DNA from: Octopus sinensis
Taxonomy: Eukaryota
DNA: 64,000 bases
Direction: 5' to 3'
Assembly: GCF_006345805.1 (NCBI RefSeq)
Contig: NC_043008.1
Location: forward strand, 4,278,001 to 4,342,000
Part shown: one piece after another, positions 11,962-59,283 of the stretch
How positions within the stretch are numbered: position 1 is the first letter of the stretch
Layout: the number at the start of each line of letters is the position of its first letter
Translations under genes and position numbers: made by a program
Notes under the pieces: generated by a model
What the model saw: the letters and a program-made list of their open reading frames with translations, nothing else
Databases searched by the model: none
What the model was told of the DNA's origin: nothing

Positions 11962-13390
11962 TCTCACTCACTCATTCACTCTCCCTCCCTCCCCCCTCTC
12001 TCTGTTCTTGTGTGTATTCGTGTATTCTAAATGAAATTCAATATTTACTATTCATGTTCAATATTTTATGGTCAAAATTATAGAGTTTCGAAGAAGAGTT
12101 TGGTAGAAGACTTTGGTCAGTTAATTTGCCATGTTTCTGAGAGACAGTATATATAGAAGTGTCATCACTTTGGTCACAGAATTGCTAATGAAGAAGAGAA
12201 GAGAATAAAAGAGGGATGTGGTGGAGATTAGGGAAAAAGCCAGTGAGAAATTCTGTGTAGGAGGTAACTGAGGTGTGAAGGTGTAAAGGGTGCAGGAAGA
12301 GTAGAGAGGATGGGATATATATTCGCTACATTCAAATATAGATTTTATATTTTCTGTACCATAGATTGTATTATAGATGCATGTATATTTTTGAGTATCT
12401 TACTCCACTATAAGACTTGAAAAAGTTATTGTTCCATCAGAAACCATTCTATATTTTCTTGTTTTAATCCCCTACTTTACTTCTATCAATGGCTTGAATC
12501 TCACTTTTTTTTTTTATCTATCGAGGAAGATTTTTTTTTTATATTCCAGTGCTTGGTATTTAACTGCTGAAATGTTTCTTGATGGTCCTACGGTTGGAAT
12601 CAATTAATATTTTCTCTTCAACTTGCTAGCAATCATGACAAGAATGTCATAAAACCCTGAAGCATGATGTAATAACTGGCTGGATAGGATTCTCCCAGGT
12701 TATTAAATGTATCTTTTTGGCCAATAAAGAAATGCAATTAACTGTAAATCTCCAAATAGTCACAAAATTGTTTCAGGATTTGCACAGAATTTCCCCCCAT
12801 TGTTACTAGCTTAACTCACTGGACTGTGACTATTACAGGGCATTCCTTCAAGGGTTTTAGTCAACCATAACAAACCACATCAATCCTTGTGATTATTCCT
12901 GTCAGATACTTATTTTATATACTATAACCCTGAGCCAACTGAAGCCTTGTGAGTGGATTTGGTAGGCAGAAACTGAGAGAAGTCTGTCGTGTATATTGTT
13001 TGTCATGAGAAAATTTTACAAGGTGAAAGTTGGTGACAGGAAGGGCATCCGGCCATAGAAAATCTGCCTCAAAAAATTCTGTCTGACCCATGCAAGCAAG
13101 GAAAAATGAACATTTAAAAGAACTGATGATGATATTATTGAGTGGCTGGGTTCACTTTTTAACACAGCAGTTTTCGCTACATGTGTAGCCCTGTTTTTAG
13201 AATAGGTATGCCAAATTGTATGGGGAGACTAAAAAAGGCTGATTCATAAAGGGAATCCAGTCTTAAAACATCACCTCAAAATGTCCAACACTAAAAAGTG
13301 AATGTAAAACTGAGGATGATTTGTTTCTATGAAACATAAACTCAAACATAGACACAAACATACTTATATACACAGATATGCATGTACATG

Positions 13391-13422
<32 letters not shown>

Positions 13423-13499
13423 ATAATTCTTAATTATATTAAAGGGTACAGAAAACACCAGCTTACTATAAAGTGGAAGTAAAAACTGCCAACTTAACC

Positions 13500-14865
13500 A
13501 CAAAAGTATCCTTTTTATAAGAATGGGATGGATCATATCTGAAAGTAGCTGCAGCAGTTGCGAAGAATGAATTTGTACGTAGTCTGTTTCTGAGAGCTAT
13601 TCCATTGGACCTCTGTCTAATCATTAAAACATTGATTTAATGATCCAGCATTAAGTGCTGCATTATGTCTTTGCTGATCGTGGGAAAGTCTCATCTTCCT
13701 TCTCTCTTGAGACTCTGTCTGATGTGCTGCATTATGTCTTTGCTGATCGTGGGAAAGTCTCATCCTCCTTCTCTCTTGAGACTCTGTCTGATGTGCTGCA
13801 TTATGTATTTGCTGATCGTGGGAAAATGTCATCCTCCTTCTCTCTTGAGACTCTGTCTGATGTGCTGCATTATGTATTTGCTGATCGTGGGAAAGTCTCA
13901 TCCTCCTTCTCTCTTGAGACTCTGTCTGATGTGCTGCATTATGTCTTTGCTGATCGTGGGAAAGTCTCATCCTCCTTCTCTCTTGAGACTCTGTCTGATG
14001 TGCTGCATTATGTCTTTGCTGATCGTGGGAAAGTCTCATCCTCCTTCTCTCTTGAGACTCTGTCTGATGTGCTGCATTATGTATTTGCTGATCGTGGGAA
14101 AGTCTCATCCTCCTTCTCTCTTGAGACTCTGTCTGATGTGCTGCATTATGTCTTTGCTGATCGTGGGAAAGTCTCATCCTCCTTCTCTCTTGAGACTCTG
14201 TCTGATGTGCTGCATTATGTATTTGCTGATCGTGGGAAAGTCTCATCCTCCTTCTCTCTTGAGACTCTGTCTGATGTGCTGCATTATGTCTTTGCTGATC
14301 GTGGGAAAGTCTCATCCTCCTTCTCTCTTGAGACTCTGTCTGATGTGCTGCATTATGTCTTTGCTGATCGTGGGAAAGTCTCATCCTCCTTCTCTCTTGA
14401 GACTCTGTCTGATGTGCTGCATTATGTATTTGCTGATCGTGGGAAAGTCTCATCCTCCTTCTCTCTTGAGACTCTGTCTGATGTGCTGCATTATGTCTTT
14501 GCTGATCGTGGAAAGTCTCATCCTCCTTCTCTCTTGAGACTCTGTCTGATGTGCTGCATTATGTCTTTGCTGATCGTGGGAAAGTCTCATCCTCCTTCTC
14601 TCTTGAGACTCTGTCTGATGTGCTGCATTATGTATTTGCTGATCGTGGGAAGTCTCATCCTCCTTCTCTCTTGAGACTCTGTCTGATGTGCTGCATTATG
14701 TCTTTGCTGATCGTGGGAAAGTCTCATCCTCCTTCTCTCTTGAGACTCTGTCTGATGTGCTGCATTATGTCTTTGCTGATCGTGGGAAAGTCTCATCCTC
14801 CTTCTCTCTTGAGACTCTGTCTGATGTGCTGCATTATGTCTTTGCTGATCGTGGGAAAGTCTCAT
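13500..14865 (-). pseudogene. Frameshifted N-terminus of a Helitron RepHel-like ORF made of STPR-like 23-aa repeats
   Basis: The repeat reads (MRLSHDQQ[R/I]HNAAHQTESQERRR)n. The frame is broken by 1-nt deletions at ~14650 and ~14512 and by a shift near 13625, after which IRQRSNGIALRNRLRTNSFFATAAATFRYDPSHSYKKDTFVV follows. Confidence 0.65.
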
Positions 14866-14866
14866 C
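13655..14866. repeat. Minisatellite, 69-bp unit, about 17.6 copies
   Basis: Unit GTGCTGCATTATGT(C/A)TTTGCTGATCGTGGGAAAGTCTCATCCTCCTTCTCTCTTGAGACTCTGTCTGAT; 18 GCTGATCGT cores counted. Confidence 0.98.
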
Positions 14867-17800
14867 TCCCTTAAGGAGCCGTTTATGCATCATTGCAATG
14901 TTGTGTTAATTCAAGTGTTAATATGAAACTGTAAATGTAAATAACTTGCAACACTGCAACAGGTGTGATGATTATGAGTTGGTCATTGAATGGTAAATGC
15001 ATAAATTCAATTTAAAAGTGAAACATTGTTATAAACTGATTAGGCTGGTATTTCTAGCACATCCTGCTACCACTGAACAGGTATTTGCGATAAAGGACAT
15101 GCCATTATCACAAATAGCTGTTACATGGTAGTAGCGCGTGCTAGAAATAGCAGCCAAATATTTCATTTTTCTGTAGAAGGGAGCCGTTTATGTGGTGAGG
15201 GACCTCGGACTTTTGGGAGAGAGTCCAAGGTCCCCCACCACAACCCTCTCTTTATTTCTGAATAAAAATAGGCTTGTGGCATATTAGGAGTTCAGGGTAC
15301 TTCACGCAAAATAAATCCCTTTTTTTTTTTGCCCTAGTCAAACACGTGTGGGTGCATTTATCAAAATTTATCCAATTTACAAATGAAAAAGGTTACATAC
15401 CAAATTCAGCAGAATGAATAAATGGGTTTTACTTGATCAGTATTGCTATGTAACAGCGTTGTCATCAATTATAATGGTTGTTGAAATGAATCAATATGAA
15501 TGACTCCATAAGACGAGTGGAGTTAGATTCTGTCCAGTTAGACAGAAGTTGTTGAATAGGACACAACCGTACACCATACAGGGTGTTCGGGAATGAACAA
15601 GGGAAGCACAATATTAAATGTTCATGCAAGGGGTAATATCTCAGTTTGTTTTTGTAAACTCTAGGTAACCTGAAAAGCTTATGGATGAAGTGGAAACACA
15701 TCAATTAAACCTGGCAAAAACCATGTGTTAAATGTGTTAAATGTCACTTTGCATTGTTCAATGACCAAATGATGAAGTCATTTACTTGGAGGAAAATTTG
15801 TGAATCTGTTTCGAATCCCAAACAATGAATGTTTATTTAAGAATGACACCCTGTTATCAGCAATAACTGTTACATGGTAGCAAGGCATGGTAGAAATAGC
15901 AACCAAATCTTCATTTTGTGTGGAAAGGAGCCGTTTACATGTCATTTTGATGTCATGTTAATTTAAGTGTTATTATGAAACTGTAAATGTGCAATAAAAG
16001 TGAAACATTGTTATGAACCGGAAGAATAAAAGGGAAACATGGATGTTATTCCTTCACTTTTGACATGTAATAGCGAACCAGTGTAAAAAAATTGCTCCAG
16101 GCCACATTAGGCAAAAAGTTGAAAACTTCTTTGGCTCATGGCACTCTGTGGATCGTATGTAATGTATGTGTAAAGTTTGAATGAAATCGGTTGTGTAGTT
16201 CTCAAGTTTTAGGGATTCACACAGACAGACTCATAGACAGACACACACACACATTCTCAGTTTTATATATTAATACACATACACACACACACTTATATGA
16301 TATATATGATAAGCTGCTACACATTTCCAAGCTCCTAAATTCCTCTCCATAAGTATTGGCTAACTGGAGCCCAGAGTAGAAAACACTGATAAGGTAGGTT
16401 CCTTATTTGTGAGAACTGAAGCATTCATTGACACCTGGGCTGAAATGAATTTGTGTTTTGGTGGTGTTGATGCCATGTTGCTTGCTAATTCCTTACTTTC
16501 CAAGCATTTGGACTGGACATTTCTTAATCAAGTTAGAAGAATGATTCTTGCTGCTGTTAACAATTTGAATTCTCGTTGGTAAACGAGAGACATTGATGAT
16601 GTTAGGGTTGTGCTGCTCAATGGTCCATTGTTTTACTCTGACAAAATCTCAAAGAGATGTTGGTTGAAGACTGCTGCTGTTGCAAGTATTTCAACGAATC
16701 CCTTGGCTTATTCTTGTCTTGCCAGTGTTGTTCTTGCAGATATTGATCTGCATAGGTTTGGGCAAGATATAACCATCGTCAATCTCTTGAGTTTGCAAAA
16801 CTACTGAGTGATGCTGCTCTTCATCCGCTGAGTCATTTTAATTTCTTAAAATATTAATTTAGGGTATAAAATGGACAATGAGAGTTTTTGGGGTTGTTGC
16901 TGTTTAGCTCCAACTCATCTCTGGAAAAGCAGACTTATGACCAAAGGTGTTTTAGTTGTAGCCATTTGCCATTTTTAATGCATTGTGTATCCAGAACTGC
17001 ATCGTTCGATATGTCCTTCCCCAGCTTCATTTCTTTTTTCTTCCTTTCTCTAAGATAGTGGAAAATTAATCGAGGAAACTCTGGCTACCATTTCAAACTG
17101 GTAGAATAATTGCAGAGAAGCTCACTCATTGGCTCGGTTTAGTAAGTAGTTAAAAAAAAGAGTTTGAGAGCTTGTGTGTTTGAATGAGTGACTTTGGCTT
17201 GAAGCTGGGTAACTTCACAAGGAACCAGTTGGAAATCTGATTGCATCATGGCAGCAACTAACTTCATAAGTGATGTCTTTTCTCTTTTATTAAAGACACT
17301 TTTAAATTCAATTCTGTGTCTTTTTTATAATTTTCTTTTTAAACTGTTGCTGCTGAAATTGGTACATATTTTTAGCTAGAGTTATTTTATCTTTACAAAC
17401 ATCCCTTTCATTTTTAAATTGCAAATTTTCTTTTTTATATTTAAATAGAAAATGTTTTCTTTTGAAATCAAGTTCCTGATTTCATTCATTTGAAGATTCT
17501 CATTCTATACTTTGGTTTTTATCATTAAAAGAGAAGCAAGTTATATTTCTTTTGCTCAATTCTTTGAAGTCTCATTCTATAGACATTCATGGAGCAAATA
17601 TTTTATTAGTTTTATTTCATTGTCAAAATAACAAGCATGATAAAATATACTATATTTAATTTTCTACTTAATTTTATCTTTTTTCAAAATGAATTTTTGA
17701 ATGTTTATTTGCTTTTAAATAAGATAGTATTAACAAATGTTTTTAAATATGTTTGCTTGTAATTATTTTATCTACATATAAAGAGAAGTTACTAATTTAA

Positions 17801-18963: not shown

Positions 18964-20500
18964 CACACACACACACACGGTCATTTGTTCAAAATCAGTT
19001 CCATCGAAAATAGATCAAATAACTCAACTGTGAAAAGCACCATACGTTAGAAATACAGGTAGAATACACCCTTACCTTTCCCCAAAAACTTTTTCCAAAC
19101 AAACCCCCTTAAAATATTCAATTAAAAAACCCTAGAAATACATATACCCAAATTAAATAAATAAATAAATAAACCAAACTGGGAAAGTAAACAGACAAAT
19201 AACACCCACCACAAACACACCCTAAACAAATCAGGCAACCAACTAAAAAAAAAAAAGGAAACCAAGGAAGAAACACAAGTATCAGACTACCCACATACAC
19301 CAATGGATATATATGTGTGTGTGTACACGCATGCACATACACACACACACACTCACACATATACACATACACACACACGTGCTTACATATATTTAATAAA
19401 TTAAAATGTTTAAAACAAATGAGGATTTAATATTTTTGCAGTAAAGCATCCGATAGATATTGTTGGTGAGGTAATACATATTGTCTTCATATATTTTAAG
19501 GCTCAGTCAGCAAAAGAGGGCAGCTTTCATAATATATTTCCACGTTCCATCAGATAAAAAGAAAGAAGCTATCTTCAAACTGAAGACTTGCTATGAATGA
19601 TGGCCACAAATTAGACCCCACTAAAGACAGCCACAAGCCAGAGGATGCTGTTAATGAAGTGGGTGACAGACTAAGAAGATAACCACTCAACAACCAATGT
19701 TATCCTTTCCATGGGCTACAAAATCGTTTCTGTCCCCAAATTTTTTCAGATTTTGTCAACCAGGTGCTATCGTGGAAGACAACAGATGTGTTGGGCAGTG
19801 GGATTGAAATATATCAGTTCTCTTTTACTAGTTTCAGCCACTGGACTTTGGCCATGCTTCGGCCATAACTTGAAAGGTTTTAATTAAATGAATAAACCCA
19901 AGTACTTACGTTTTTAAGCCTGGTCCTTATTCTATCAGTCTCTTATGGTTGACTACTCAGTTAGAGAGTCGTAAACAAACCAACACTAGTTTCAAAGGGA
20001 TGGTGGGGGACAAACACAAAGGTACACACACATATATATATGCATATGTATATGTATATGAGAGGCTTCTTACAGTTTCTGCTTATCACACCCACTCACA
20101 AGGTTTTGGTCAACCTAAGATTTACCCAAGGCACCATACAGAAACATAGCCAAGTGTTTTGAAGTTTGGTTTGCAAAAACATGGTTCCAGATGCAATTCC
20201 ACTGCACAGCATTTCTGGCAAATGTCTACGGTAGCCAATGGTTAACAAAGCTTTGTTAGTGAAACTTTGCAAGCAGATATAAGTATCGTGGCATATTGGA
20301 AGGGTTACATCTGTTGAGTGGTAGCCTTACTCTGGTACCACTGTACCACTGTAACTCTTAGTTTTCTTTGATGATGACATTCTGTTGCCATCATTTATAT
20401 CAGTCTGAAGATAATTTCCTTTTTCCAATCTGAGAGTTGGTGTAAAGAAATGTTATCAAAGCTGTTCTCCTTCTGCTGACTAGGACACAAAACATAACAA

Positions 20501-23731: not shown

Positions 23732-23806
<75 letters not shown>

Positions 23807-23811
23807 TTCTT

Positions 23812-23850
<39 letters not shown>
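23732..23850. repeat. (CT)n microsatellite
   Basis: Long interrupted CT run. Confidence 0.95.
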
Positions 23851-23851
<1 letters not shown>

Positions 23852-25763
23852 TCTCTTCATTCTGTGTTGGTTTTAGGGAACCTTTAGGTTTGATTTTGGT
23901 TTACACATTTGGTAGCAGTCTCTGTTCATATTTAACTCTGACATCTGTGTAACTCTGTTGTCACTCACCTTACTGGCAGCAGCAACAAAATCTACCTAAA
24001 ATTCCAACCTACCATCTTTAGAAAGGGAGGGGCACACTGGAAAATGTGTTCCTAGATATTCCCAAAACACAGGAAGGTCCTGGTTGGAACACTTTGGATC
24101 ATAGCTTAGCTCAGTCAAGGCTATCCTGGGGTTACACAACAACTGTGTCTTATTGTCTTAAAGCATAATTACAAGGCTTCACAATTTCTAATTACTTCTC
24201 ATGGTAATCTTCCGTATATGACATGAATAAAACTGCATTCCAAAATGTGGAATTCATATTTTGGGGCTGGTACAGTGTGACATAAAGAAGATTTAGCTAC
24301 TATTTCTAATAAACTGAGTGACCTTGTTGAGGCTTCCTTATTGACGTGAGTATCACTCTTGTATCTGAAACAGAGGATGTGTCACACGTATAAATGTTCT
24401 CTGTTGCATTCAAAACACACACCAACACACTGCAATCACCAGTTTGCTGAATGCAACATGTATCTCTCTTCTATTACTGCAAATGACATTTGTGAAGAGT
24501 TGCAATTATGGTTTCAGGTTTTTAATGGGCCAATTACTGGTTTGCTGTAATAACATTAGGGTAGGTGTCAAGAGAGCATTTCAATGCAACTTTGAACAAA
24601 TGTCACAGTACTTTTGTTGGAAAATGCCTGTCTATCAATTTTTCTCATTGAATTTTACATCTGTCACTACATCGGCAAAAGATGTGTGGGTGTGTGTGTG
24701 CGCACATCATCATTTTTCTTCCCCAAAACATGAGACTATATGTCAATGTTAGAAATCTATATAATGTCATCAAATGCAAGTATTGTGAAACTTCCTAAAG
24801 ACACCATATCTCAGAAATCCATCCATCCAGGTCAGCTGACTTGCCAAGCCCATTGTACTTTTCTCTTCTACGCCAGACATTCTGAATGAACATTGTGGCA
24901 TGAATGTTTGGTCTGGGTTTTAGTCAGGTAACAAGAAGAAAAGGAAGAGTTGGGATCACTACTTTGGAAAGTATATTTAGATGTGTGCATGCAAGATGGT
25001 TTGAAATGTATAAATGAATGTTTTCCATGAAGGTAATGATAAATATCAAAAGGTAATTTTTTGGTAAATAAACCTAATTTATTCCTTGATCACACATGAA
25101 GTAGTAGGCACATCAAAGATAAGTGTTCAAGGCAACAGGGTGTAGCAAGACATGAGTTAATTTCTTAATAAATATAAAGGTAGTCAGATCCAGTGCTTGG
25201 CTGCAAATCTAAGATATCCAATGAGTTCTGTGGTGGTTGTGAGGTGAAGTAGAAACCCCGTGGTTATATGAATGCTGTTTTCTGATCAGCAATAATTCAG
25301 CAACGTTTTGTCGTTTGGACAAACAGCTGATGTGTTTACATTTCAATGTCTTCTCAGGAACTGATGATTGCCTTTCAAAACGTATTCTTCACCACTGGGT
25401 CACATATATCCTTCCACGGCCAGCAGCAACTAGATGTTTCAGGCATAGCACAACTGTGTTTTGCCATCACAACAAAATAGTGCTAACATGTCTGACTACA
25501 GTCGCATTCATCTTTCACTAGTGGAAATATTTCATCTGTGTCTGCCACAACTGCAGATAATAATATTAGTTTATTCACCGAAGTGTTTGATCCTGGTCAT
25601 TGGCAGTTTGTTGTCTGATCGTCCACTCAACATCCAGTGATACTCACCATTGACTCAATGAGTTCATCGGCCAAAATAGTTCACATCCATCATGCTGCAT
25701 CCTAAGATTTCAAAATAATCCTGGTCCAGGTGGTGACATGTTATTTAACCCATAGTTATTTGG

Positions 25764-27095: not shown

Positions 27096-27672
27096 TTTTG
27101 TTCTTTTTGTTTTGATAGATTCTATTTTATGAATTAATCAGAGTCTTAGAGTGGAAGATTCTGTACTTATTTTCATATAAATATAATGCTTTGAGATCAA
27201 GCTGTGTATACCATACATCACATCTAACTCAGCCTGCTGGAGACGGCAACCAAATCTCCTTCATGTGACACACAAACATCTTTAAAAGAAAAAGGTCACA
27301 GGAAAAAAACTAGTTGTAAATAAAGCTCAGGATGATCATGGTTGGAAAGCATTTCATCATAGTTTTGTTCTACATTCTTTTGTTCTTTTTTTTTGATAGA
27401 TTCTATTTTATGAATTAATCAGAGTCTTAGAGTGGAAGATTCTGTACTTATTTTCATATAAATATAATGCTTTGAGATCAAGCTGTGTATACCATACATC
27501 ACATCTAACTCAGCCTGCTGGAGACGGCAACCAAATCTCCTTCATGTGACACACAAACATCTTTAAAAGAAAAAGGTCACAGGAAAAAAACTAGTTGTAA
27601 ATAAAGCTCAGGATGATCATGGTTGGAAAGCATTTCATCATAGTTTTGTTCTACATTCTTTTGTTCTTTTTT
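27096..27672 (+). repeat. Near-perfect 281-bp tandem duplication, followed by a diverged third copy to ~27855
   Basis: GATAGATTCTATTTTATGAATTAATCAGAG starts at 27114 and 27395; a diverged AATAGATTCTGTTTTGTGAATTAATCACAGAG starts at ~27678. Confidence 0.95.
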
Positions 27673-30600
27673 TGTTTAATAGATTCTGTTTTGTGAATTA
27701 ATCACAGAGTCCAAAATTGAAGTATTTCTTTCTTATTTTCATGTCAATATGAAGCTGTACATATCAAGCTGTGAGTAGCACAGATAGCTTGCTCAAGCAG
27801 CAAACACATCTCCCTCAACTCGCATACAACATTACCAAATAGAAAAGGTAGTCTAAGGAAGTTTTGGCTGCTATTTCTTGCAAATCGAGAAATCATATAA
27901 AGGTTTGCATGTGCTAATATAGCAATTCATAGCAAAGGTGATCAGCACAAACAATCTGCTACAAATGGATTTTTTTTGATTGGCTAAAATTACATAAATT
28001 TAAATGCTTGTAACTTCTTTATTATTAATTTCTAGAATAAATGAATATGATTTTCATCATCAGCTAAAACTACAACAGAACTAAATTCTTTGAAAATAAT
28101 CTGGTGAAAATTAGAAAAAACTTCAAGTTGTTGGAAGGAATTTAACTGAATCCAACATTTTATGTCTGTATTTTTAAAGACTCTGTCTTTGACTTTGTTT
28201 ATCATGAGTTTGTATATGAAATTTCTCTTCAAGAAGAAAATATTTGGTCATTTGGGTTTTATTAATGCATTTAATAAATGTAGAATAAAATAGTTATTCT
28301 TACAGTTGGACATTGTCTGTGTGTCGGTTAACACCAACTTACTAAATAGTTAGAGAAGAGATATTTGTTTCTAATATAAGCAAAAGCCCTGAAATTTGAG
28401 GGAAGGGATTAATCGATCATTTGATGTCAATGCTTGACTGACTCTTTATTTTGGAGGAATGAAGAGATGAAAGGCAAAGTTAACCTCGACAGTATTTGAG
28501 TTCAGAGTGTAAAAAGTCAGAAGACGTACCACAGGGCAACAGGTATTGGTGTTCACTCAATGCCTTTGCAATGGTTTTGGATTTTACTGAATCCTCTTTC
28601 ATTAGCCATGGGAATCTACATCTATTATTTCCTGTACTGTTATTTGCCATTAACTTTGAAAAGACAAGTCAGAGACGTTCTGGCCATGACCATCCTGAAT
28701 ATATTTTTTGCAGGTAGAGAGGATCTACCTGATGTGTCTTTTCTTTTGTTGCTGTTGTTGTTGCTTCACCCCAAGATTCAAGTAAACCTATGATCAAAGC
28801 CATTACAACTATGTCCAACTTTTTTTCATTTTTTTTTGTGGTGGGTATGGGTGGCAGTTAGACATAAGTGTATCTCAGACTACATTATACAATGTGTATT
28901 TTTTCTTTTGTTGTTCCATGATTTTTATTTATTCATTTATTCATTGTTATTATTCATTTATTTATTTTATAGGCATAGTGTATCAAGGATACTTTTCAAA
29001 GTGTTCTTTTACTTTGGAAGATGGTATGATGTGATTTAAAGGAAATTTGGCTGCTGTTTCTTGCTTCTCAAGCAAATGCATAGAGACTTCAATGAAATGT
29101 TATCATTTTTAGGTGAATTCAAATGAAAGAAGTTTTAGCTAGCATCCAAATTATTCTTTTAAACTTGACTGCTTTGTAAAAAAAAGAAATTTTAATATAA
29201 AAAATTAACTTCATGCTCTGCTGATAATGCTTTCCTTAACAATGATTAATGTAAATGTGTATATGCCTCTGTGTCTGTTACACTTGAATGGAATCTCTTG
29301 CAAGCACAACTGAAAGTACGAAAGTTGTTATATCAGAAATTGCTCAGCAGGAAGTTTATAATAACAGCAACTGTTGGCGTGACCAGAGAGTTACAACATT
29401 CAATCCACACTCATGAACTCATAGTTTCAATTCCATTGTATAGCACATTGGGAAAGTGGTTTCTTTTGTAGATTCTGATTGAGTCAAAAACTCTACCCTC
29501 CCTTTCCTTCAATGATTTTCCTAGGATTCCTTGCCATCCTTGCCTATCACTCCTTTCTATCTCCTTTCCTTCATAATTTCTGTCCATATTCATCCTTTAT
29601 AATGTTGGTAATTTCTAGACCAGAGGTTCTTAACCATCTTTTATCTATGAACTCCTTTGATTGCTATTTTATTCTGGGGAACCCCCTTAGCCATTCAGTG
29701 TTTTAAAACTAGTTTTATAGAAACTTATTTCAAAATTCCTATTTTGATTTTCTCTTGTGTAAGTTGAACTGAGTAAAATGTTAGAGAAAGAAACCATCTA
29801 AAGCAAAATTTTTTCTGGGCCTTTAAAATACTATCGTGGACCACTCAAAATCTCAAATGGAGTCCAGTTGAGAACCATTGCTCTACACCCTCCCTCTCAT
29901 ACAATCTATGACCTTTCAGTTCTATCCCACCTTTTGGTCAATAACCCCTGTCGCTAATCTCTTCCATCTCCCATCTTTCCATGCCACACCCCCCTCATCC
30001 ACTCTCACTTATAGGAGCCACTTTAGGCCCTTAGCTCTGCAAGTTATGAAGTGATCTTCATTAGCGCTGGTGCCACAGAAAAAGCATCCAGTACACTCTG
30101 TGAAATTGTTGAAGTATTCCAGCCATAGTAACCATGCCAAAGTAGAGATTAAATGATGATGTTGACGATGATGGTGGTGGTGATGTCTCACTTTGTGTCA
30201 TACTGGTTATACCTGGAAATGATATTGAGAGTACAAATACTTGTGATATACTCAGCTACTTACATTACTATAATACAAGAAGTAGGCAGTTCTGAAACCA
30301 ACAAAGAAGGATCCATTTAGCTGATTACATTTACTGGGAAATTTATTGTAGTATTTAACATGAATTGTCAATTAAATGAATTTGAATTCCTTTCTAACAA
30401 ACCAACATTAAAATTTTGTTAGTCATTCACTAATATTATTATTTTCTTTATCTATAAATAATTATTTCTGGTTAGCTTTTTAATGGTCTCTGCATTAAAT
30501 ATATTATCACTTAACTAGATTATTGTTTTACTTGTGGAGGCTACCTTTGAGTTAGACATTTTCGAAACAAAAGCTGAAAGCCTTGTTGAAATTATATTCA

Positions 30601-36112: not shown

Positions 36113-37799
36113 CCCATATGCCCATGTATAACTCCCAATATGTAAAACCATACTCACATGCATGTATAACCACACACACACATTCAGGCAGAACAAGATA
36201 CACGCATAACGTATAAGCACAAACACACAATGTTGAATCACACAGACACACACATTCACAGCCACAGCACACCACACCAATCCATCAATGTTGAACGACA
36301 CATATGCACGTATACTCACACATTCGTATAGCAATACACACACGTATGCTACATGAATAACTACACACATAAAGAGCTAATGAAGGAGCCGCTCTGCAGT
36401 GATGCTTCCTCCCAGGAACACCGACCAAATTCCTTCAAATCTCCTCCTACCACATCTTAAAAAGGAAAGACCCATTGGCTAATGTCTTCTTAGATCTACA
36501 AAGGGAGAGATTGGTTGTGGATGGAATGTCTTTGATCACGAGTCTGCTGATCAGGGGCTAAAACAGTAATACCAGCAACAACCACAGAGACATACACACA
36601 CATACATATGTATAACCACACACTCAAGTAACTATACATATAAAACGATATATATATATATATATGTATATCACAATACACACGTACACACACAAACACA
36701 CAACACCACACATTCATATATAACCACGCAGTGATGCATAATCATGCACCCATAGAACCATGAATACAAAATACATACATTTATGCATCCATTTATATGT
36801 CATATCAGCTTTATATTTCCTGCTGTATGAATTAATTATTGAATTTTATGCATTTGTATCTATTTTGAAATGTTAAACGTGTATGAGGTGTTTAACTTAT
36901 TCATTTTTGAAGCATTTTTCATTCTGTTAATGAGAACCGAAGTATTTTAGTTGGCTGTATTTGAATAACATCAGAGAAAACTGAAAATAGGCCAAATCGA
37001 AATAGCATCAAAAATCAGCTTTATTCTATATTGTCTTTGAATTTGAGTCCTGTGTTCTTCATAATGTCATGTCTAAAACAAATAAATATTACTTTCTCAT
37101 ATATTGATTTATTTGTCACAAGAGACAAAACTGAATTATACTTAGTTTCCGTATAACACACACATTTATAACATACTAACATACACTTTCATATGTAATA
37201 TATTTGTAATACATACATGCATATGCATATATATATGCATACATACATACATGCATACATACATACATATATATATGCATATATATATATATATAAAACA
37301 TAGCATCCTCATAGACACGCATGCACAAACAGAAAACAGCACACACTCATGCACACACACTTCTACACATGTACAAACACACCCTCATGCACACACATAC
37401 ACAAGCATTCACAATATACACGTGCACGATAGCTTCATACACCCACGTGTACGCATACACAGACTGGGTTTCCTCATATACACACATAAACAGGAAATAT
37501 GGACACATAAGCCTGTTCACAGTTATCCCCCTTGTCACACACCTCTTGGGTCACCTCTCACAGTTTCCTCCCATGCCACTCATGCCTCTAACAACTTCTT
37601 CCTACTTCCAGTCATTTCAGCATCCAGTGACCATCTAATTGAGAATGTTTGTGCTTTTCTCCCTCCTCTTTTTCTCCCCTCCTCTTCTTTTCTTTCTCTA
37701 CATCATCATCATCATCATATGCTCAAAACATAAAAAGACTTTTTCTTCTATCTTTTCTGAGCATAAACCTAATACATGTATTCATGTTCGTAATTTTTA

Positions 37800-38367
37800 C
37801 CTGTTTGTTGTCTACACCACCTGTTTCTCAACTGCTATTCGGCCGTTATATTGACGACTGTATCGGTGTGACCTCACTCTCCCGTGAACATCTACACTCC
37901 TTCCTCTCTTTTCTCAAATCTTTCCATCCTGCCCTCCACTTCTCCTCCACCCACCCTAAACATACCAAGCTTTCCATCTTCTATTCCCAATTCCTCCGTC
38001 TACGCAGGCTCTGTAGTGACGACCATGACTTTGAGACTCAGTCTCAACTCATGGCTCTCCACTTCATCTTACGTGGATATCCCCTCACCACTATCCACAC
38101 CGCCCTTGCCACAGCATGTTCCATGAATCGTGCATCTGCTCCCTCCCCCTGCACCCATCCTGCCATCTCCCGTTTCCCCTCACCTACCACCCCACCACCC
38201 TACCTCTCCAATGCACCATTCTCCGAGCCTTCCGGCAACTCCAGTCCGACCCCTCCACTTTGCACATCTTCCCTAACCAACCCCTCCCCTCCTTCAAACG
38301 AGACTTCTTGGTCCACAGCTTCTTCCTTAACCCAACCTCCCAACCCGGCCTGTTCCCCTGCACCAGG
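37800..38367 (+). mobile_element. Penelope-like retroelement RT C-terminal fragment with internal deletion
   Basis: FGRYIDDCIG (YIDD at 37847-37858), FHPALHF, HPKHTKLSIFYSQFLRLRRLCSD...RGYP, then after a frameshift near 38175 PLTYHPTTLPLQCTILRAFRQLQSDP...FKRD...QPGLFPC. These are typical Penelope RT/thumb/linker motifs; the GIY-YIG endonuclease is absent. Confidence 0.88.
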
Positions 38368-38528
38368 CTCCTATCTGGTCTGGCAGAGTTTCTACAGCTG
38401 GATGCCCTTCTTTATGCCAATCACTCCAAGAGTGTAGTAGGTGCTTTTTATGTGCCACTGGCACAAAGGCCAGTCAGGTGGTTCTGGCAATAGCCATGCT
38501 CAAAAGGTGTTTTTTACTTGCATGGGAG

Positions 38529-39459: not shown

Positions 39460-40216
39460 AAGAAGCCTGTTGTGTGTAAGTGTGTTTTAGTGTCTCATTT
39501 TCTTGCCATTGCATAATGGTTGTACATGGGCATCACCACCATACAAACAGTGTCTTTTGTGTCCAGTTTCCTGTGGAATCATGTTTAGCTACAGGGAAAT
39601 ATTGCCTTGAGGGTTGGCAACAGGAAAGGCATCCATAGAAAATCAACCTCCACAAATTCCATTCAAACTTTGCAAGTATAGGAATGTGGAAATTAAAATG
39701 ATGAGGATGATGATGATTCAGTTATTGTAGACATAAGACATTAACTGGAAAAAGATATAATTACAAGGTGAAATGAGAAAAAATATGAAAATCTATGACA
39801 TATCAAAAAATAGCGTAAAATGAATTTCCAAATATATATTTGTAGACATTTGTAATAAAAAATTACTTTTTTAAAAAAGTATCTTCCTTTTAAATGTTGC
39901 AGCTCATGAAATATTGTCTATTATTGGAAATTATCATCATTATAATTATTCATTTTTTTTCCCTGGCATCTAATATTCATTACCATTTTGCATTATAGTC
40001 TTGATAGAATATTTATTTTTCATTTTAGTCGGTCCTTTTAAAAAAAAATTCTTGTCTTTTAGTTTTAATTTTTTCTTTTTTTAAAGAAACAACTGTTATC
40101 TGGATTTATAGCTTGAACAAGAATTTGGAAGCATCTTAGGTTATTCATTTAGATCAATAACTACAGGTTTTTTTCTTTTTTTTTATACTTTTTTTTGTAT
40201 CTTTCTTTACCATCAG

Positions 40217-41649: not shown

Positions 41650-41713
<64 letters not shown>

Positions 41714-41746
41714 CCTCTCTCTCCCTCTCTCTCTCTCTCTCTCTCA
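41650..41746. repeat. (CT)n microsatellite
   Basis: Long interrupted CT run. Confidence 0.95.
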
Positions 41747-43208: not shown

Positions 43209-43445
43209 ATACATACACACACAGACAAAATAGAAATAAAAGCAAAACAACAAAAGTGAATAGGACATACACTGTGAATGTATTCAGTTGACACATTCAG
43301 CTTAAAATAGGAAAAAGAGGAGGGTGTGTAACATTTTGAACATGGCTCTTCTTCAGAAAGAAGAAAGAGGAAAGGTCCAGAGAGAAGAGAAGAAAAAAAA
43401 TAGTCCATGAAAAGTATGTGTGTGGTTATTTGGCTGATATGTCTG

Positions 43446-43631
<186 letters not shown>

Positions 43632-44642
43632 CGTTTGTCTATATCTATATTCTCCTTCATAGTAATAAAACATATGTAATAGTTCATATTGCTTATTGAA
43701 TATTCACATTTAAAGTTTTGTTCATAAAGTTGTATTTCTACACATTTTCATTTTTGCCTAACAACAAGAATATCATTTATTGTGGCTGTACATAAAAGAT
43801 ATTTTTTTAATGTTTAGTCAGAAGAAGAAGGCAAGAGTCTATAAAGTTTTATATGATTTTCTGACACTGGTGGGCATAAAAGGTGGATTATATTATGACT
43901 CATAGACGAGAGGCCTGGTCCAATTGTTTGCAACAGAGCAGATCCTGCTAAAGGTACCAATATGAATATTCTGCTGTTTATAGCATAGATAATTCTTCAA
44001 AGTTTGAATATTTTCACACATCAATACCTTTACCTGCTGATAAAAATTAGAGATATAAGAATTGGAATTCCATTTGGGAGGTACTGGCAACTGTTTATAT
44101 ATTTTGATTCGGCTATATATATATATATTTACATATCACCATCGTCATCATCATCATACAATGTCACTTTTCCCATGCTGGCATACATTGGATGGGTCGA
44201 CATGAACTGACAAACTGGGGAGCTATGCTGAGCTTCAGTATCTACTTAGGTTTCTACAGTTGGATAACTTTCCTCTCCTAATGCCAACCACTAGGACTTA
44301 TTCTTTGCAAGCCCAGTACTTATTCTATTGGTTTCTTTAGCCACACCATTAACTTTCGGGGACGTAAACACACCAACATTGGTTGTCAAGTGATGGGGGG
44401 GGGGGGGGCAAAACACACAACACACACACACACACACACATGTATTTATATATATATATATATATATATACGATGGGCTTCTTTCAGTTTTCATCTACCA
44501 AATCCACTCACAAGGCTTTGGTCAGCTCAAAGCTATAGCTGAAGATGCTTGCCGAAGGTGCCACACGGTGAGACTGAACCTGGAACCATGTGGTTGCAAA
44601 GCAATATTCTTACCACACAGACATACTTATATAATATATATA

Positions 44643-45497: not shown

Positions 45498-45950
45498 TCT
45501 ACTACAATGGAGAATGCTTCTTATTAATTAGGTATGTAACAATTACTAAAAGCACTAAAAGAAAGCAATTATTTAAGGGTTGACCGTCTGGAAATATTTT
45601 CATAAATTTGTGTTCTAAGCAATATATTTCAATTTCTCAAGCTTATTGAATTTTTTAACTCCAGTTTCTTACAAATTTAAATATTCATTCATTCACTGCA
45701 TCCAATTATTCACAAATTTAAATATTCATTGCATTCACTGCAGAGTATTCCATTTTCATTTGCGAGGTCTCTCAATTTCTCTTTTACTGTTTCAATTTCA
45801 AGTTTTAATTTGCTATTGTATACGTAATGTAAAAACATTATTTATTGAATGAAAATTTGTTTAAATACCCTTGGAATTTTTGTAAAATAATTTAAAAGTG
45901 ATTTTGTTGTTATGGCTGTTTGGAATGCTATAAGCCTTCCAGTAATAACT

Positions 45951-47728: not shown

Positions 47729-50344
47729 AACACACCCACTGCAAAGCTTACAGATGGGCTGCTGAACTGAAATGTCTATGTTGCTTTAAGGGGAAGGTAA
47801 CACTTGACAAATTGCTTCGCCCTATGTTGTTGGACTACCATGATATTTGTTTTAAAAAGAGATTATGACTGCGATAAAATAATGAAAGCAGTATTTACTA
47901 AGCAAGTGAGTACTATTATACAAAGAAATGATTAGACATAAAATATAAAAATTATTAGAATTAGAAATCAAATGTGAAAATATTATCAAGGGGCTAGCAG
48001 AAAACCACCCGGAGGGTGGTCTTTCTGCTAGTAATGATAATAATAACAGCAAAAATTATAGTAATAATGATAATGCTTTCAGGGCTACTGTAGCTCTGGG
48101 CTGACCAAAGCCATGAGTGGATTTGGTTGACAGAAACTGAGAGAAGCCCATTGTGTGTGTGTGTACGTGTGTGTTATCCATTTTCAATGTTCTGTGAAAC
48201 CATGAGGAAATATTAACTTGTTTGGAAATAATTATGAGTTGCTAACTGGAAGACTGTCATAAATTTGCCTCATTACAGTTGGTTGAGGCGATGCAAGCAT
48301 GACAAAGTGGGCATTAAAATGATGATGAATGCAAAGAGAAAATAGAATAGAAAAAAAACAGTAAAAAAGAAAGATCTATACTGAGAAAAGGGTGCGATGA
48401 ATAATATCAACAGATATCAACAATTGATAACAAAAAGAAAAATAATCCCCTCTAATGTGGTGGCAATCACATTAGGGAATTCGGAGCACTCCTTAGCTAA
48501 TCCAAGATTACCCTTCCAAATCTTGTTACCAGCCTCCTGCTTTGTGTATTTAGAGTAGGATTACACCAAATTTATTTAATGTCATTTACTAAAGGGCAGA
48601 ACTCTTGCTCTGGCTTTATGTTCAATTTCAAGTGGTAGTTCCAGAAGCTGATTAAAACTTGACACTTGAGCCCTGATTAGGGTTCCCAACTGTACCTTTC
48701 AACAATATTTGCTATAACTATGGCCAAAGGAAAGTAAGTAGTCTTCTTTTGCATGGTAGTTATTAGGCCAACCTCCAGCATAGACCGAACTGAAAGCAAG
48801 ATCCAAGTTTGTGTGTGTGTGTGTGTGTGTGTGTACAGACACACATAAATCTTCTACCAGGATATCCACAAACATAACAAGCTAAAATAACTGCAACCAA
48901 ATCATCTTCAATTCACATCCTATAGTTTCGAAATAAAATAAAAGAGGATTCAGTGTATAAAGTAATCCTAGATGCACTGAATCTGATAAGAAAAAAAGGG
49001 GTGGGGATTGATGAGGGAGGCTCCAGTTTTATCAGTGTTTATTCTGAGTTACTGCTGTCCTAGAGGGGTTATTTGTGCTGTAGCTAGGAGAGTCCATGTC
49101 TGCTCTGAGTATTAGTCCATCCCTGGAATGATATGTTGGATAATGTAGTCCTAGATACACGAGGCATAGAAAAATACAAGATAGTCATTGTTATAATGCC
49201 TTTCGTCATTGATCAGGGCTGGACTTGCAATAAACAATAACAACAACAACAACGAGGCTATAGAATTAACACTCTGAAGACACTCCAGGATTGGGAGAGT
49301 CTGTTGGTTGCTTAAACCCCAAGTCATCTCTAATCAAGAGTTTTCCAACCATGACCTCACCGTCTTTTCTTTCAAACAATGCAGGTAGAATTACATTATC
49401 CTACACATCCTTTGTAAGACAGCAATGGAGGATGAGGGAAATTTATAATTACAGTTTGTATGTTTTACTGTTATTCTTTACTTTTTATGGGGATGGTGCT
49501 TATTCCCCCCCCCCAGATTCTGTAGTTCTAAGCTAATGATAAATGTTAACTCGACCTTAGAATACAACACCCGTCTATTATGTGTTACAATGTTAGAGGA
49601 TCTGATAGCTTGCATATTTCGATTGTTTGGTTAAACAGAACAGAAATGCAAGCTGCCTTCTGCAAAATCCAAGAATTATTAGCTGTTACCAATATCTTCA
49701 TATAGAGTGGTTTCAAATCTACTGCACACTAATTGGCTGGTTGTATTGAGTTCTGCTATTTATATTGACAAAATATATCTATTTACAGCTATGGGTATCA
49801 GAAGACAGCCAACCAATTAGTATTGTATATGTGTGTGTGTGTGTGTCTCTCTCTCTCCACACGCACACACACACACACGCACACACATATTCACCAGCAC
49901 TAATGTCATCATGGAAAGTGAATGTAAGATAATGATGATAATGGTACTCATAAAACCGTAAACCATAGCAGTCACTTGCAAGCAAACCTGTAACATTTGT
50001 CATGCTTTTGCACATTGCTCTAACTTTGTAGTCAAGAGTAGATATAGACAAGCTTTCAGTTATTTCATCTTTAAATCTAATGGAATATCAAGGGGGGTAA
50101 CAGCTGGAGGGGGGGGAGAGAGCTGTGACAGCAATTAGCTGACTCAAAGACACAATACACCACCCAAAGAAGCAAACCCACTGTCATATGAGCATTAGTC
50201 CAACTCTTTAACCACTATACACGTTTGTATATTAGAAACGTGTGTGTGTGTGTGCAAATAGATGAAAGGGTTGGTTGGTTCCTGTCATTATGGAAATTTA
50301 AACTTTATCAATAAAATGTACAAAATCTTCACAGTTTAATGGAT

Positions 50345-54009: not shown

Positions 54010-54166
54010 TCATTATCATCATCATCATCATTGTTTAACGTCTGTTTTCTATGCTAGCATGGGTTGGACGGTTCGACCGGGGTCTGGGAAGTCAGGAGGC
54101 TGCACCAGGTCCCAATCTGATCTGGCAGTGTTTCTACAGCCGGATGCCCTTCCTAATGCCAACCTA
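54010..54166 (-). mobile_element. Retroposon 3' portion with (GAT)n tail
   Basis: Reverse complement GTTGGCATTAGGAAGGGCATCCGGCTGTAGAAACACTGCCAGATCAG...GTCCAACCCATGCTAGCATAGAAAACAGACGTTAAACAATGATG; relatives at 13020-13135, 38358-38470, 39480-39720 and 60095-60232. Confidence 0.8.

Positions 54167-59166: not shown

Positions 59167-59283
<117 letters not shown>

What the first reader, a model, noticed from the sequence alone, without database searches (positions are those of the whole stretch)
13500..14866. Helitron ORF start expanded into about 18 near-identical STPR-like 23-aa repeats
The 69-bp unit encodes ESQERRRMRLSHDQQ(R/I)HNAAHQT. This has the 23-residue period and E-[ST]-x-E-x-R-x-x-R-L pattern of the STPR DNA-binding domain, which has four repeats in silkworm FMBP-1 (established). 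It runs, via a frameshift, into FRYDPSHSY...VV, like the start of Helitron RepHel cores, and a Helitron-like 5' end lies 1.4 kb upstream. About 18 homogenised copies is far more than four. I infer a transposon-borne, copy-number-variable DNA-binding array, either a feature of the family or raw material for exaptation.
Basis: partly seen in the sequence, partly recalled or inferred. Interest (0 to 1): 0.72.

Follow-up and report, generated by a model that had tools for sequence, protein, structure and literature searches.

The report
Dead Helitron fragment with repeat array
The 1.2-kb array is real and descends from the repeated DNA-binding-type start of a Helitron transposase gene, but this copy is a broken fragment with no enzyme part, and Helitrons were already known to carry such repeats.

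Summary
Observation confirmed. Window 13655-14866 holds 17.6 head-to-tail copies of a 69-bp unit at 98% identity. On the minus strand it reads ESQERRRMRLSHDQQ(R/I)HNAAHQT.

The reading frame is ancestral, not fortuitous. Its relatives are the 23-residue repeat arrays at the N-termini of Helitron transposases. Many of these pass Pfam STPRs (PF21107) and carry Helitron_like_N and PIF1. One close relative matches the N-terminal domain of the active bat Helitron Helraiser.

The peptide just downstream of the array matches the conserved pre-zinc-finger motif of those proteins. The window's own unit, however, does not reach the Pfam STPR model or silkworm FMBP-1 directly. Only the first half of the unit fits that pattern.

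The copy is dead. Three single-base frame breaks interrupt it, and the window contains no nuclease or helicase. The missing zinc-finger piece lies 34 kb away on the other strand (47734-47865) and abuts exactly, which suggests an inversion or a misassembly.

Helitron relatives carry 4-11 units, and one related family varies by exactly one unit. Repeat-number variation is therefore a family trait, and STPRs in Helitrons were published in 2024. This is a new member of a known kind, of modest interest.

The parts
13655..14866 (-). 69-bp tandem array, 17.6 units, encoding the 23-residue STPR-like repeat ESQERRRMRLSHDQQ(R/I)HNAAHQT. The first in-frame ATG is at 14865-14863, inside the first partial unit.
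   Evidence: TRF; unit list and variants; homology of the translation to Helitron N-terminal arrays.
14649..14651 (-). First frame break inside the array: the TTT run is shortened to TT in the third full unit (14612-14679).
   Evidence: Unit-by-unit alignment to the consensus.
14509..14511 (-). Second frame break inside the array: the CCC run is shortened to CC in the fifth full unit (14475-14542).
13617..13654 (-). End of the array frame (stop TAG at 13617-13619). It also holds the place where the frame must change, at a T4 run (13626-13629), to reach the junction peptide. Together with the next part it forms one degenerate last repeat unit, as in relatives.
   Evidence: Translations; sequence; alignment with P0004 and P0008.
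13469..13624 (-). Junction peptide IRQRSNGIALRNRLRTNSFFATAAATFRYDPSHSYKKDTFVVKLAVFTSTL. It is homologous to the segment between the repeats and the zinc-finger-like motif of Helitron N-terminal domains. It ends in TAG TAA at 13463-13468.
   Evidence: tblastn of P0004 residues 104-148 gives E 0.011, and of P0008 E 0.049. With my own profile it ranks 2nd of 3872 six-frame fragments, per-fragment p about 5e-5. It is collinear in the alignment.
47734..47865 (+). Zinc-finger-like piece THCKAYRWAAELKCLCCFKGKVTLDKLLRP..., on the opposite strand 34 kb away. It continues the junction peptide without a gap. It is probably the other half of the same ORF, separated by an inversion or a misassembly.
   Evidence: Profile E 2.5e-7. 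tblastn hits from nine different relatives. The joined peptide aligns as one domain, profile positions 12-77, at 46.2 bits, against 9.8 and 29.8 bits for the pieces apart.
14867..16215 (-). Non-coding leader upstream of the array. It is unique in the window apart from an internal duplication (14873-14938 = 15925-15990; 15105-15190 = 15854-15937) and a 58-nt inverted repeat (15039-15096 / 15102-15159). A candidate Helitron 5' end, A|TC, lies at 16216|16215-16214 next to a microsatellite. It is unverified.
   Evidence: No coding similarity to relatives.
47994..48031 (+). Strong 17-18-bp hairpin, CTAGCAGAAAACCACCC-GGA-GGGTGGTCTTTCTGCTAG. It ends in CTAG followed by T and lies about 130 bp after the zinc-finger piece. 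It is a candidate Helitron 3' terminus, unverified.
   Evidence: DNA fold -17 kcal/mol, z -7.0.

Best explanation
The array is the N-terminal repeat region of a Helitron (HLE1-type) transposase gene, preserved in a dead, truncated copy.

In intact relatives, a run of 23-residue E-[ST]-x-E-x-R-x-x-R-L units sits at the very start of the transposase. A zinc-finger-like C-x2-C...CC-x2-GK motif follows, then the Rep nuclease and the PIF1-type helicase.

The likely role of such arrays rests on two analogies and is an inference. [quoted passage not shown] In Helraiser, the N-terminal 489 residues are required for DNA binding and cleavage. On that basis the array most likely helps tether the transposase to DNA.

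The unit is 69 bp, a multiple of three, and the copies are nearly identical. The array therefore behaves as an in-frame minisatellite that gains and loses whole units by slippage or unequal exchange. This is shown for a related family and inferred here from the RRI higher-order pattern.

In this window only the leader, the array, the junction and a short zinc-finger piece remain. The frame is broken three times by single-base changes in homopolymer runs, and nuclease and helicase are absent. The zinc-finger piece now lies 34 kb away in the opposite orientation, most simply through an inversion with one breakpoint inside the relic. The sequence here most likely has no protein function and persists as a minisatellite.
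For: 1. An exhaustive HMMER search with the 278-aa ORF found 36 proteins at E <= 1e-3. Pfam scans of all 36 gave STPRs (PF21107) above its cut-off in 14 and below it in 6. Helitron_like_N, DUF6570 or PIF1 appeared in 7. Examples are P0005 from Leptopilina, P0003 and P0045 from Branchiostoma, and P0006.

2. P0004 matches the window array at 44% identity over 105 ungapped residues, in the 23-residue register. P0004 passes PF21107 (36 bits). It matches Helraiser chain 7lcc_A residues 13-384 at E 1.2e-25.

3. A unit-level shuffle test removes the inflation that repetition causes. The window unit beats composition-matched shuffles against nine Helitron arrays (0-109 of 20000 shuffles reach the observed score). 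The best match is always in the same register, with 10-13 of 23 residues identical to units of P0004, P0008 and P0010.

4. The junction peptide lies directly downstream, on the same strand and in the right order. It matches the pre-zinc-finger segment of these proteins.

5. The zinc-finger piece at 47734-47865 completes the junction with no gap in the profile.

6. Relatives are named by their sources as Helitron helicase-like domain-containing protein and ATP-dependent DNA helicase.

7. In the P0010 cluster, 2 of 9 copies that are 98-100% identical carry exactly one extra 23-residue unit.

8. STPRs are reported as a domain stably present in HLE1 Helitrons (PMC11417382). The Helraiser N-terminal domain is needed for DNA binding (PMC4778049). 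The mode of STPR binding to DNA is described in PMC4856987.

9. Signs of decay: two frame breaks inside the array, one after it, and no Rep or helicase anywhere in the 64 kb.
Against: - The window's repeat gives no Pfam STPRs hit even at E <= 10. It gives no PDB hit. It is not above chance against FMBP-1 units.
- Residues that contact DNA in the second half of the FMBP-1 unit (Tyr16, Arg20, Met13, Ser14, Ala17, Leu21) are not conserved. DNA binding by this type of unit is therefore an extrapolation.
- Five of the 36 hits are clearly unrelated proteins (WD40 NTPase, ATP-grasp, kinase, M56 peptidase). E-values from the repetitive query are therefore inflated.
- Taken alone, the junction match is weak (E 0.19 over the whole window).
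- No other copy of this family could be found. The termini, family membership at DNA level and the age of the copy are therefore untested.
- All three frame breaks lie in homopolymer runs and could be assembly errors.
- The inversion rests on one abutting pair of short peptide matches.
Confidence: 0.85

Rival explanations
1. It is an ordinary non-coding minisatellite whose unit happens to be 69 bp and open. The STPR and Helitron resemblances are chance.
For: Three of the six frames are open, and openness is cheap at about 0.19 per frame. There is no direct Pfam or FMBP-1 match. Some hits of the repeat query are spurious.
Against: In the unit-level shuffle test, 0 of 20000 shuffles reach the observed score against P0004, P0008 and P0010, always in the same register. 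The adjacent junction peptide and the zinc-finger piece match the same protein family in the right order. The other two open frames have no relatives above any Pfam cut-off.
Confidence: 0.03
2. It is a live coding sequence. Either it is a host gene exon, or it belongs to an active element that encodes an STPR-type DNA-binding protein. The three frame breaks would then be homopolymer errors of the assembly, and the rest of the gene would be reached by splicing or would lie elsewhere.
For: All three frame breaks are 1-nt changes in T or C runs. The array has no stop codon in its own frame. It starts with an ATG (14865), just as relatives start right at their arrays. The sequence at the break, TA|GTAAGC, resembles a splice donor.
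Against: No further exon of the family lies on the minus strand. The only continuation is on the opposite strand 34 kb away, and after about 45 codons it stops too. All five kinds of substitution seen among units change the amino acid (G47T R->I, G20A R->K, G26C and C28T giving RL->TF). The numbers are too small to prove neutrality.
Confidence: 0.06
3. The two Helitron pieces, at 13.5 kb (minus) and 47.7 kb (plus), are independent fragments of two insertions. They are not two halves of one copy split by an inversion.
For: Both ends sit next to microsatellites. No inverted repeat that could have mediated an inversion was seen. Each piece is short. Old Helitron debris can be common in a genome.
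Against: The pieces abut at the same residue of the profile with no gap or overlap. Joined, they score more than the sum of the parts (46.2 against 39.6 bits). Their strands and positions are exactly those that a simple inversion of about 13466-47733 would produce. Nothing else from the roughly 840-residue relatives matches anywhere in the window.
Confidence: 0.4
4. The expansion to 17.6 nearly identical units happened in place, after the copy died, by pure minisatellite dynamics. It was not inherited from an active master element with a long array.
For: The window array is longer (17.6 against 4-11 units) and more uniform (0.97 against 0.43-0.88 mean unit identity) than any relative examined. 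Private variants sit at the 3' edge, as in arrays that are homogenised in place. The rest of the relic is decayed.
Against: Intact relatives also hold identical neighbouring units and 9-11 units. Unit gain is seen among coding-competent copies of a related family. Without other copies the two histories cannot be told apart.
Confidence: 0.5

Closest known systems
N-terminal STPR-like repeat arrays of Helitron (HLE1) transposases. Examples: Leptopilina heterotoma XP_043468040.1 (P0005), Branchiostoma XP_035663607.1 and XP_078620002.1 (P0003, P0045), and the unnamed fragments P0004, P0008 and P0010. The association was reported by HELIANO (PMC11417382).
   Same: - Strict 23-residue period.
- E-[ST]-x-E-x-R-x-x-R-L in the first half of the unit, and D-Q-x-x-H-x-x-A in the second half.
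- Placed at the very start of the ORF.
- Followed by a degenerate last unit, then F-x-Y-x-P...Y, then the C-x2-C...CC-x2-GK motif.
- Units often nearly identical, with variable number.
   Different: - More units (17.6) and more uniform units than any relative examined.
- Frame broken three times.
- No Rep or helicase.
- Does not itself reach the Pfam STPRs model.
Helraiser, the reconstructed active bat Helitron (PDB 7lcc; PMC4778049).
   Same: The relative P0004 aligns with Helraiser residues 13-384 (E 1.2e-25). This region includes the degenerate repeats and the zinc-finger-like motif of the N-terminal domain, which is needed for DNA binding and cleavage.
   Different: The window's own peptides are too short or too diverged to hit Helraiser directly. 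Helraiser's repeats are few and degenerate.
STPR DNA-binding domain of Bombyx mori FMBP-1 (PDB 5d23; Pfam PF21107) and its animal homologues such as ZNF821.
   Same: The unit has 23 residues with Glu1, Ser/Thr2, Arg6, Arg9 and Leu10. It is predicted to be all-helical.
   Different: - FMBP-1 has four units, the window 17.6.
- The second half of the unit lacks Tyr16, Arg20, Met13, Ser14, Ala17 and Leu21.
- There is no significant direct similarity.
- FMBP-1 is a host transcription factor, not part of a transposase.
Coding minisatellites, meaning in-frame tandem repeats that evolve by unit gain and loss.
   Same: - The unit length is a multiple of three.
- Identity between units is 98%.
- A recurrent variant forms a three-unit higher-order pattern.
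- Edge units are the most diverged.
   Different: Here the coding frame is no longer intact.

Membership tests
STPR domain (Pfam PF21107; FMBP-1 type) | Tandem units of exactly 23 residues | tested here: met
   Period 69 bp, 17.6 copies. The unit translations are 23 aa long.
STPR domain (Pfam PF21107; FMBP-1 type) | Conserved Glu1, Thr/Ser2 and Arg9, which stabilise the N-terminal half-helix (PMC4856987) | tested here: met
   The unit has E1, S2 and R9, and also R6 and L10.
STPR domain (Pfam PF21107; FMBP-1 type) | DNA-contacting residues of the second half: Tyr16, Arg20, Met13, Ser14, Ala17, Leu21 (PMC4856987) | tested here: not met
   The window unit has D13, Q14, R/I16, H17, A20 and H21 (compared).
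STPR domain (Pfam PF21107; FMBP-1 type) | Score at or above the Pfam gathering threshold of PF21107 | tested here: not met
   hmmscan of the 12-unit and 4-unit peptides gave no STPRs hit even at E <= 10.
STPR domain (Pfam PF21107; FMBP-1 type) | Significant direct similarity to a solved STPR (FMBP-1, 5d23) | tested here: not met
   phmmer against the PDB found nothing. BLASTP gave E 0.18. In the unit-level shuffle test, 10674 of 20000 shuffles did as well.
STPR domain (Pfam PF21107; FMBP-1 type) | Homology through intermediates to proteins that pass PF21107 | tested here: met
   14 of 36 relatives pass PF21107. Window to P0004 is 44% identical. P0009 matches FMBP-1 at 8.4e-8.
STPR domain (Pfam PF21107; FMBP-1 type) | Binds double-stranded DNA along the major groove | not testable with these tools
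   The AF2 model is one long helix with pLDDT 94.8. This is compatible with binding but not diagnostic.
Helitron (HLE1) transposon | RepHel ORF with a HUH Rep nuclease and a PIF1-type helicase | tested here: not met
   tblastn and HMM or phmmer searches of all six frames of the window found only the array, the junction and the zinc-finger piece. Relatives up to 2069 aa were used as queries.
Helitron (HLE1) transposon | N-terminal domain with a zinc-finger-like C-x2-C...CC-x2-GK motif upstream of Rep | tested here: met
   Junction at 13469-13624 and zinc-finger piece at 47734-47865. The relative P0004 matches the Helraiser N-terminal domain at 1.2e-25.
Helitron (HLE1) transposon | Termini 5'-TC...CTRR-3', a hairpin near the 3' end, and insertion between A and T | tested here: inconclusive
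   The candidates are A|TC at 16216|16215 and a hairpin ending CTAG|T at 47994-48031. The hairpin contains the CTAG instead of lying about 11 nt upstream of it. No other copies are available to define the ends.
Helitron (HLE1) transposon | Multiple dispersed copies sharing the same ends | not testable with these tools
   There is no second copy in the window. None was found in the reachable collections.
Minisatellite | Head-to-tail array of a 10-100-bp unit with high identity and variant patterns that indicate unit turnover | tested here: met
   The order of R/I variants is RRI RRI RRI RI RRI I RR.

The most novel reading that the evidence does not exclude
Helitron transposases carry their STPR-like DNA-binding module as an in-frame minisatellite. 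Its unit number changes quickly between copies and so tunes the length of DNA that the N-terminal domain can grip. The 17.6-unit array here would be the extreme of that range, about 70 bp of footprint at 4 bp per unit. It would have been inherited from a master element that was active with such a long array, and not grown after the copy died. A corollary is that host STPR transcription factors (FMBP-1, ZNF821) and Helitron arrays share an origin by capture or domestication.
Probability: 0.25. Interest if true: 0.5.

Novelty: new member of a known kind. Interest (0 to 1): 0.3.

Why it matters
It matters little for this locus, which is a decayed transposon fragment.

There are three points of modest wider interest:

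- The STPR-like array lies in the same reading frame as the transposase N-terminal domain in several animal Helitrons. The 2024 survey (PMC11417382) had listed STPRs among domains encoded in a separate ORF.
- The arrays gain and lose whole 23-residue units between nearly identical copies. This gives a simple natural series for testing how unit number affects DNA binding by a Helitron transposase.
- The relic marks a possible 34-kb inversion or an assembly error, which users of this genome may want to check.

Tried and rejected
- **Word-indexed protein searches.** A chimeric query and the 278-aa ORF both found nothing, because relatives share no exact 5-residue words with the query. The exhaustive HMMER search was needed.
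- **Other copies.** An exact look-up of the ORF found nothing. Neither did scans of metagenome and viral contigs by peptide pattern and by a 40-nt exact DNA pattern. Termini and per-copy unit numbers for this family therefore remain unknown. Repbase and Dfam are not available here.
- **Direct search against solved structures.** The repeat found nothing. The joined junction peptide gave only chance hits at E above 0.7.
- **Rfam.** No family matched in the whole window.
- **AlphaFold2 model of five units.** It is a single 110-residue helix. I did not run a fold search, because a lone helix matches anything.
- **Possible third zinc-finger-like match at 45715-45756.** I judged it to be chance: E 0.63, in AT-rich sequence of low information.
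- **An intron at the break.** I considered it because of the donor-like TA|GTAAGC. I rejected it as the link between the two pieces: they lie on opposite strands, and there is no acceptor before 47734.
- **A search for Rep or helicase remains downstream of 47.9 kb.** It found none.
Full report
**1. The observation**

Tandem Repeats Finder reports one array at window 13655-14866, with period 69, 17.6 copies and 98% matches. A 28-nt core of the unit occurs 17 times, only in this array, against 0 expected from shuffles.

Read on the minus strand, the array is a 49-nt partial unit, 16 full units and a 61-nt partial unit. The units encode ESQERRRMRLSHDQQ(R/I)HNAAHQT.

Variation between units is minimal:
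- One G->T change (R->I) recurs in six units, in the order RRI RRI RRI RI RRI I RR. This indicates turnover in blocks of up to three units.
- There are four private substitutions, all in the two 3'-most variant units.
- There are two private single-base deletions, one in a T run near 14649-14651 and one in a C run near 14509-14511.

They break the frame inside the array, so the longest open stretch is 12 units (ORF 13617-14453).

Three of the six frames are open over the array. A random 69-nt unit of this composition is open in a given frame with probability about 0.19. An open frame is therefore not evidence of coding here.

**2. What the repeat is related to**

Direct tests of the STPR idea fail:
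- The peptide gives no hit to Pfam STPRs (PF21107), even at E <= 10.
- It gives no hit to any PDB chain, although the FMBP-1 STPR chain 5d23 is in that set.
- BLASTP against the FMBP-1 repeats gives E 0.18.

Two word-indexed searches of the large protein collection also found nothing.

An exhaustive HMMER search of 1.84 billion representative proteins found 36 proteins at E <= 1e-3. I scanned all 36 against Pfam:
- 14 pass PF21107 and 6 more hit it below the cut-off.
- 7 carry Helitron_like_N, DUF6570 or PIF1.
- Where both are present, the STPR array lies at the N-terminus of the same predicted protein. Examples are P0005 (Leptopilina XP_043468040.1), P0003 and P0045 (Branchiostoma) and P0006.
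- 5 hits are clearly unrelated proteins, so E-values from this repetitive query are inflated.

To correct for that inflation I ran a unit-level test. The single 23-residue unit was compared with the units of each relative in all 23 rotations, against 20000 composition-preserving shuffles.
- For nine Helitron arrays, 0-109 shuffles reach the observed score, always at rotation 0.
- For P0004, P0008 and P0010, 10-13 of 23 residues are identical and no shuffle comes close.
- For FMBP-1 the score is below the shuffle mean.

The window's unit is therefore a genuine member of the Helitron-borne repeat family. It is tied to the founding STPR domain only through intermediates. P0009 matches FMBP-1 at 8.4e-8 and the Helraiser N-terminus at 2.3e-6. 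P0004 matches FMBP-1 at 0.019.

Measured against the published STPR criteria (PMC4856987), the unit keeps Glu1, Ser2, Arg6, Arg9 and Leu10. It lacks Tyr16, Arg20, Met13, Ser14, Ala17 and Leu21.

**3. The flank**

In relatives of the Helraiser type, the last repeat is degenerate. It is followed by ...SFF...A-F-x-Y-x-P-x3-Y-x3-5-V-x-I-G-x-[LM]-x3-C-x-F-C-x-A-x-K-[FW]-x2-E-x2-G-x-CC-x2-GK-[VI].

The window has IRQRSNGIALRNRLRTNSFFATAAATFRYDPSHSYKKDTFVVKLAVFTSTL at 13469-13624. This lies immediately after the array on the same strand, one frame off. The frames would meet through a one-base change in a T4 run at 13626-13629.

The evidence that this junction peptide is homologous:
- tblastn of P0004 residues 104-148 gives E 0.011.
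- A profile that I built from nine relatives ranks this fragment second of all 3872 six-frame fragments of the window. The per-fragment probability is about 5e-5.

P0004, which carries this segment, aligns with Helraiser residues 13-384 at E 1.2e-25. That part of Helraiser is required for DNA binding and cleavage (PMC4778049).

The motif belongs to the N-terminal domain, however, not to the RepHel core.

**4. What is missing, and where the next piece went**

I searched the 64 kb with relatives of up to 2069 residues by tblastn, phmmer and profile. Nothing resembles the Rep nuclease or the helicase. The ORF ends in TAG TAA at 13463-13468, just where the first cysteine of the zinc-finger-like motif is due.

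The best hit of the junction profile in the whole window is elsewhere. THCKAYRWAAELKCLCCFKGKVTLDKLLRP lies at 47734-47865 on the plus strand (E 2.5e-7), and nine relatives hit it by tblastn.

The two pieces fit together:
- The first piece covers profile positions 12 to about 48, and the second starts at position 49.
- Joined, they align as a single domain over positions 12-77 at 46.2 bits, against 9.8 and 29.8 bits apart.
- The strands and positions are exactly those that an inversion of about 13466-47733 would produce.
- The window contains no N, so there is no scaffold gap to blame.

I conclude, with moderate confidence of about 0.5-0.6, that one relic was bisected by a 34-kb inversion or by a misoriented stretch of the assembly.

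After about 45 codons the second piece also ends. About 130 bp further on lies a strong hairpin, 47994-48031, with free energy -17 kcal/mol and z -7. It ends in CTAG and is followed by T. It could be a Helitron 3' end, which would make the element a roughly 3-kb deletion derivative. This is unverified, and its geometry differs from the usual hairpin about 11 nt before CTRR.

Upstream of the array, the leader at 14867-16215 is non-coding. It contains a local duplication and a 58-nt inverted repeat. An A|TC at 16216|16215, next to a microsatellite, is a possible 5' end.

**5. How it most likely works**

- Shown: the array is homologous to the N-terminal repeats of Helitron transposases.
- Shown for a related family: unit number changes between nearly identical copies. 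In the P0010 cluster, 2 of 9 members at 98-100% identity carry exactly one extra 23-residue unit.
- Inferred from FMBP-1 structures and from Helraiser deletion experiments: in live elements the array helps the N-terminal domain hold DNA.
- Inferred: in this window the array is no longer translated and persists as a minisatellite.

Relatives have 4-11 units in register, with mean unit identity 0.43-0.88 and some identical neighbouring units. The window has 17.6 units at 0.97. It is the extreme of a known range, not a different thing.

Without other copies I cannot say whether the extra growth happened in an active master element or in place after the copy died.

An AlphaFold2 model of five units is one continuous helix with pLDDT 94.8. 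This is compatible with the model but not informative.

**6. Comparison with what is known, and novelty**

The HELIANO survey (PMC11417382) already lists STPRs among the domains stably found in HLE1 Helitrons. One relative is even annotated "Zinc finger protein 821" by its source, and others "Helitron helicase-like domain-containing protein".

The finding is therefore a new, decayed member of a known kind.

**7. Limits**

- No other copy of this family was reachable, and no transposon library is available here.
- The source organism is not identified. A dispersed SINE-like repeat in the window (for example 12920-13143) resembles, from my memory only, an abundant cephalopod SINE. I did not test this.
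- The top hit (P0001) carries stonustoxin-like Pfam domains in its N-terminal half and matches the array in residues 831-1056. I did not print it or follow it up.

Noticed in passing
window 47734-47865 (+): A short fragment of a Helitron zinc-finger-like motif (THCKAYRWAAELKCLCCFKGKVTL...). It starts exactly where the junction peptide at 13469 (-) stops. The geometry fits a 34-kb inversion, or a misoriented assembly segment, with breakpoints near 13466 and 47733. Both breakpoints lie next to microsatellites.
   Followed up: yes
window 47994-48031 (+): A strong 17-18-bp hairpin (CTAGCAGAAAACCACCC GGA GGGTGGTCTTTCTGCTAG; -17 kcal/mol, z -7). It ends in CTAG followed by T and lies about 130 bp after the zinc-finger fragment. 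It may be a Helitron 3' end, but no other copies are available to check.
   Followed up: partly
window 14873-16018 (-): The leader upstream of the array contains a rearranged local duplication (14873-14938 = 15925-15990 at 83%; 15105-15190 = 15854-15937 at 83%). It also has a 58-nt inverted repeat (15039-15096 / 15102-15159, 79% complementary). The motif AAACGGCTCC marks the joins, including the join to the array.
   Followed up: partly
window 12920-13143, with partial copies near 20052-20106, 39613-39722, 44464-44538, 48086-48146, 54124-54154, 59322-59389 and 60147-60185: A dispersed SINE-like repeat with at least seven partial copies in the window. From memory it resembles an abundant cephalopod SINE, which would place the window in a cephalopod genome. 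I did not test this.
   Followed up: no
window 37649-38437 (+): A 262-aa ORF containing FGRYIDDCIGV, a reverse-transcriptase-like YxDD motif. It is probably a decayed retroelement. It has no Pfam hit at E <= 0.01.
   Followed up: partly
window 27096-27704: A 281-bp unit repeated 2.2 times at 98% identity. Its nature is unknown.
   Followed up: no
window 43442-43631, 41650-41745, 59170-59247, 23733-23856, 13391-13425: The window is unusually rich in long microsatellites: (TCTA)47, (TC)48, (TC)39, (CT)n and (TA)18. GC content is about 34% throughout.
   Followed up: no
relatives P0003, P0005, P0006, P0045: In these predicted proteins the Pfam STPRs domain is in the same polypeptide as Helitron_like_N and PIF1. 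In several it co-occurs with DUF6570. The HELIANO paper lists STPRs among domains encoded in ORFs separate from RepHel, and lists DUF6570 as nearly exclusive to HLE2.
   Followed up: partly
relative cluster P0010, P0037-P0044: Nine copies that are 98-100% identical differ by the presence or absence of exactly one 23-residue repeat unit. This is a clean case of unit-number variation in a Helitron N-terminal array.
   Followed up: yes
relatives P0015 and P0001: P0015 is annotated by its source as "Zinc finger protein 821" but carries the Helitron junction motif, so the name was probably carried over from the STPR match. P0001, the top hit, joins stonustoxin-like domains to an STPR-like region. 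It is probably a fused gene model. I did not examine it.
   Followed up: no
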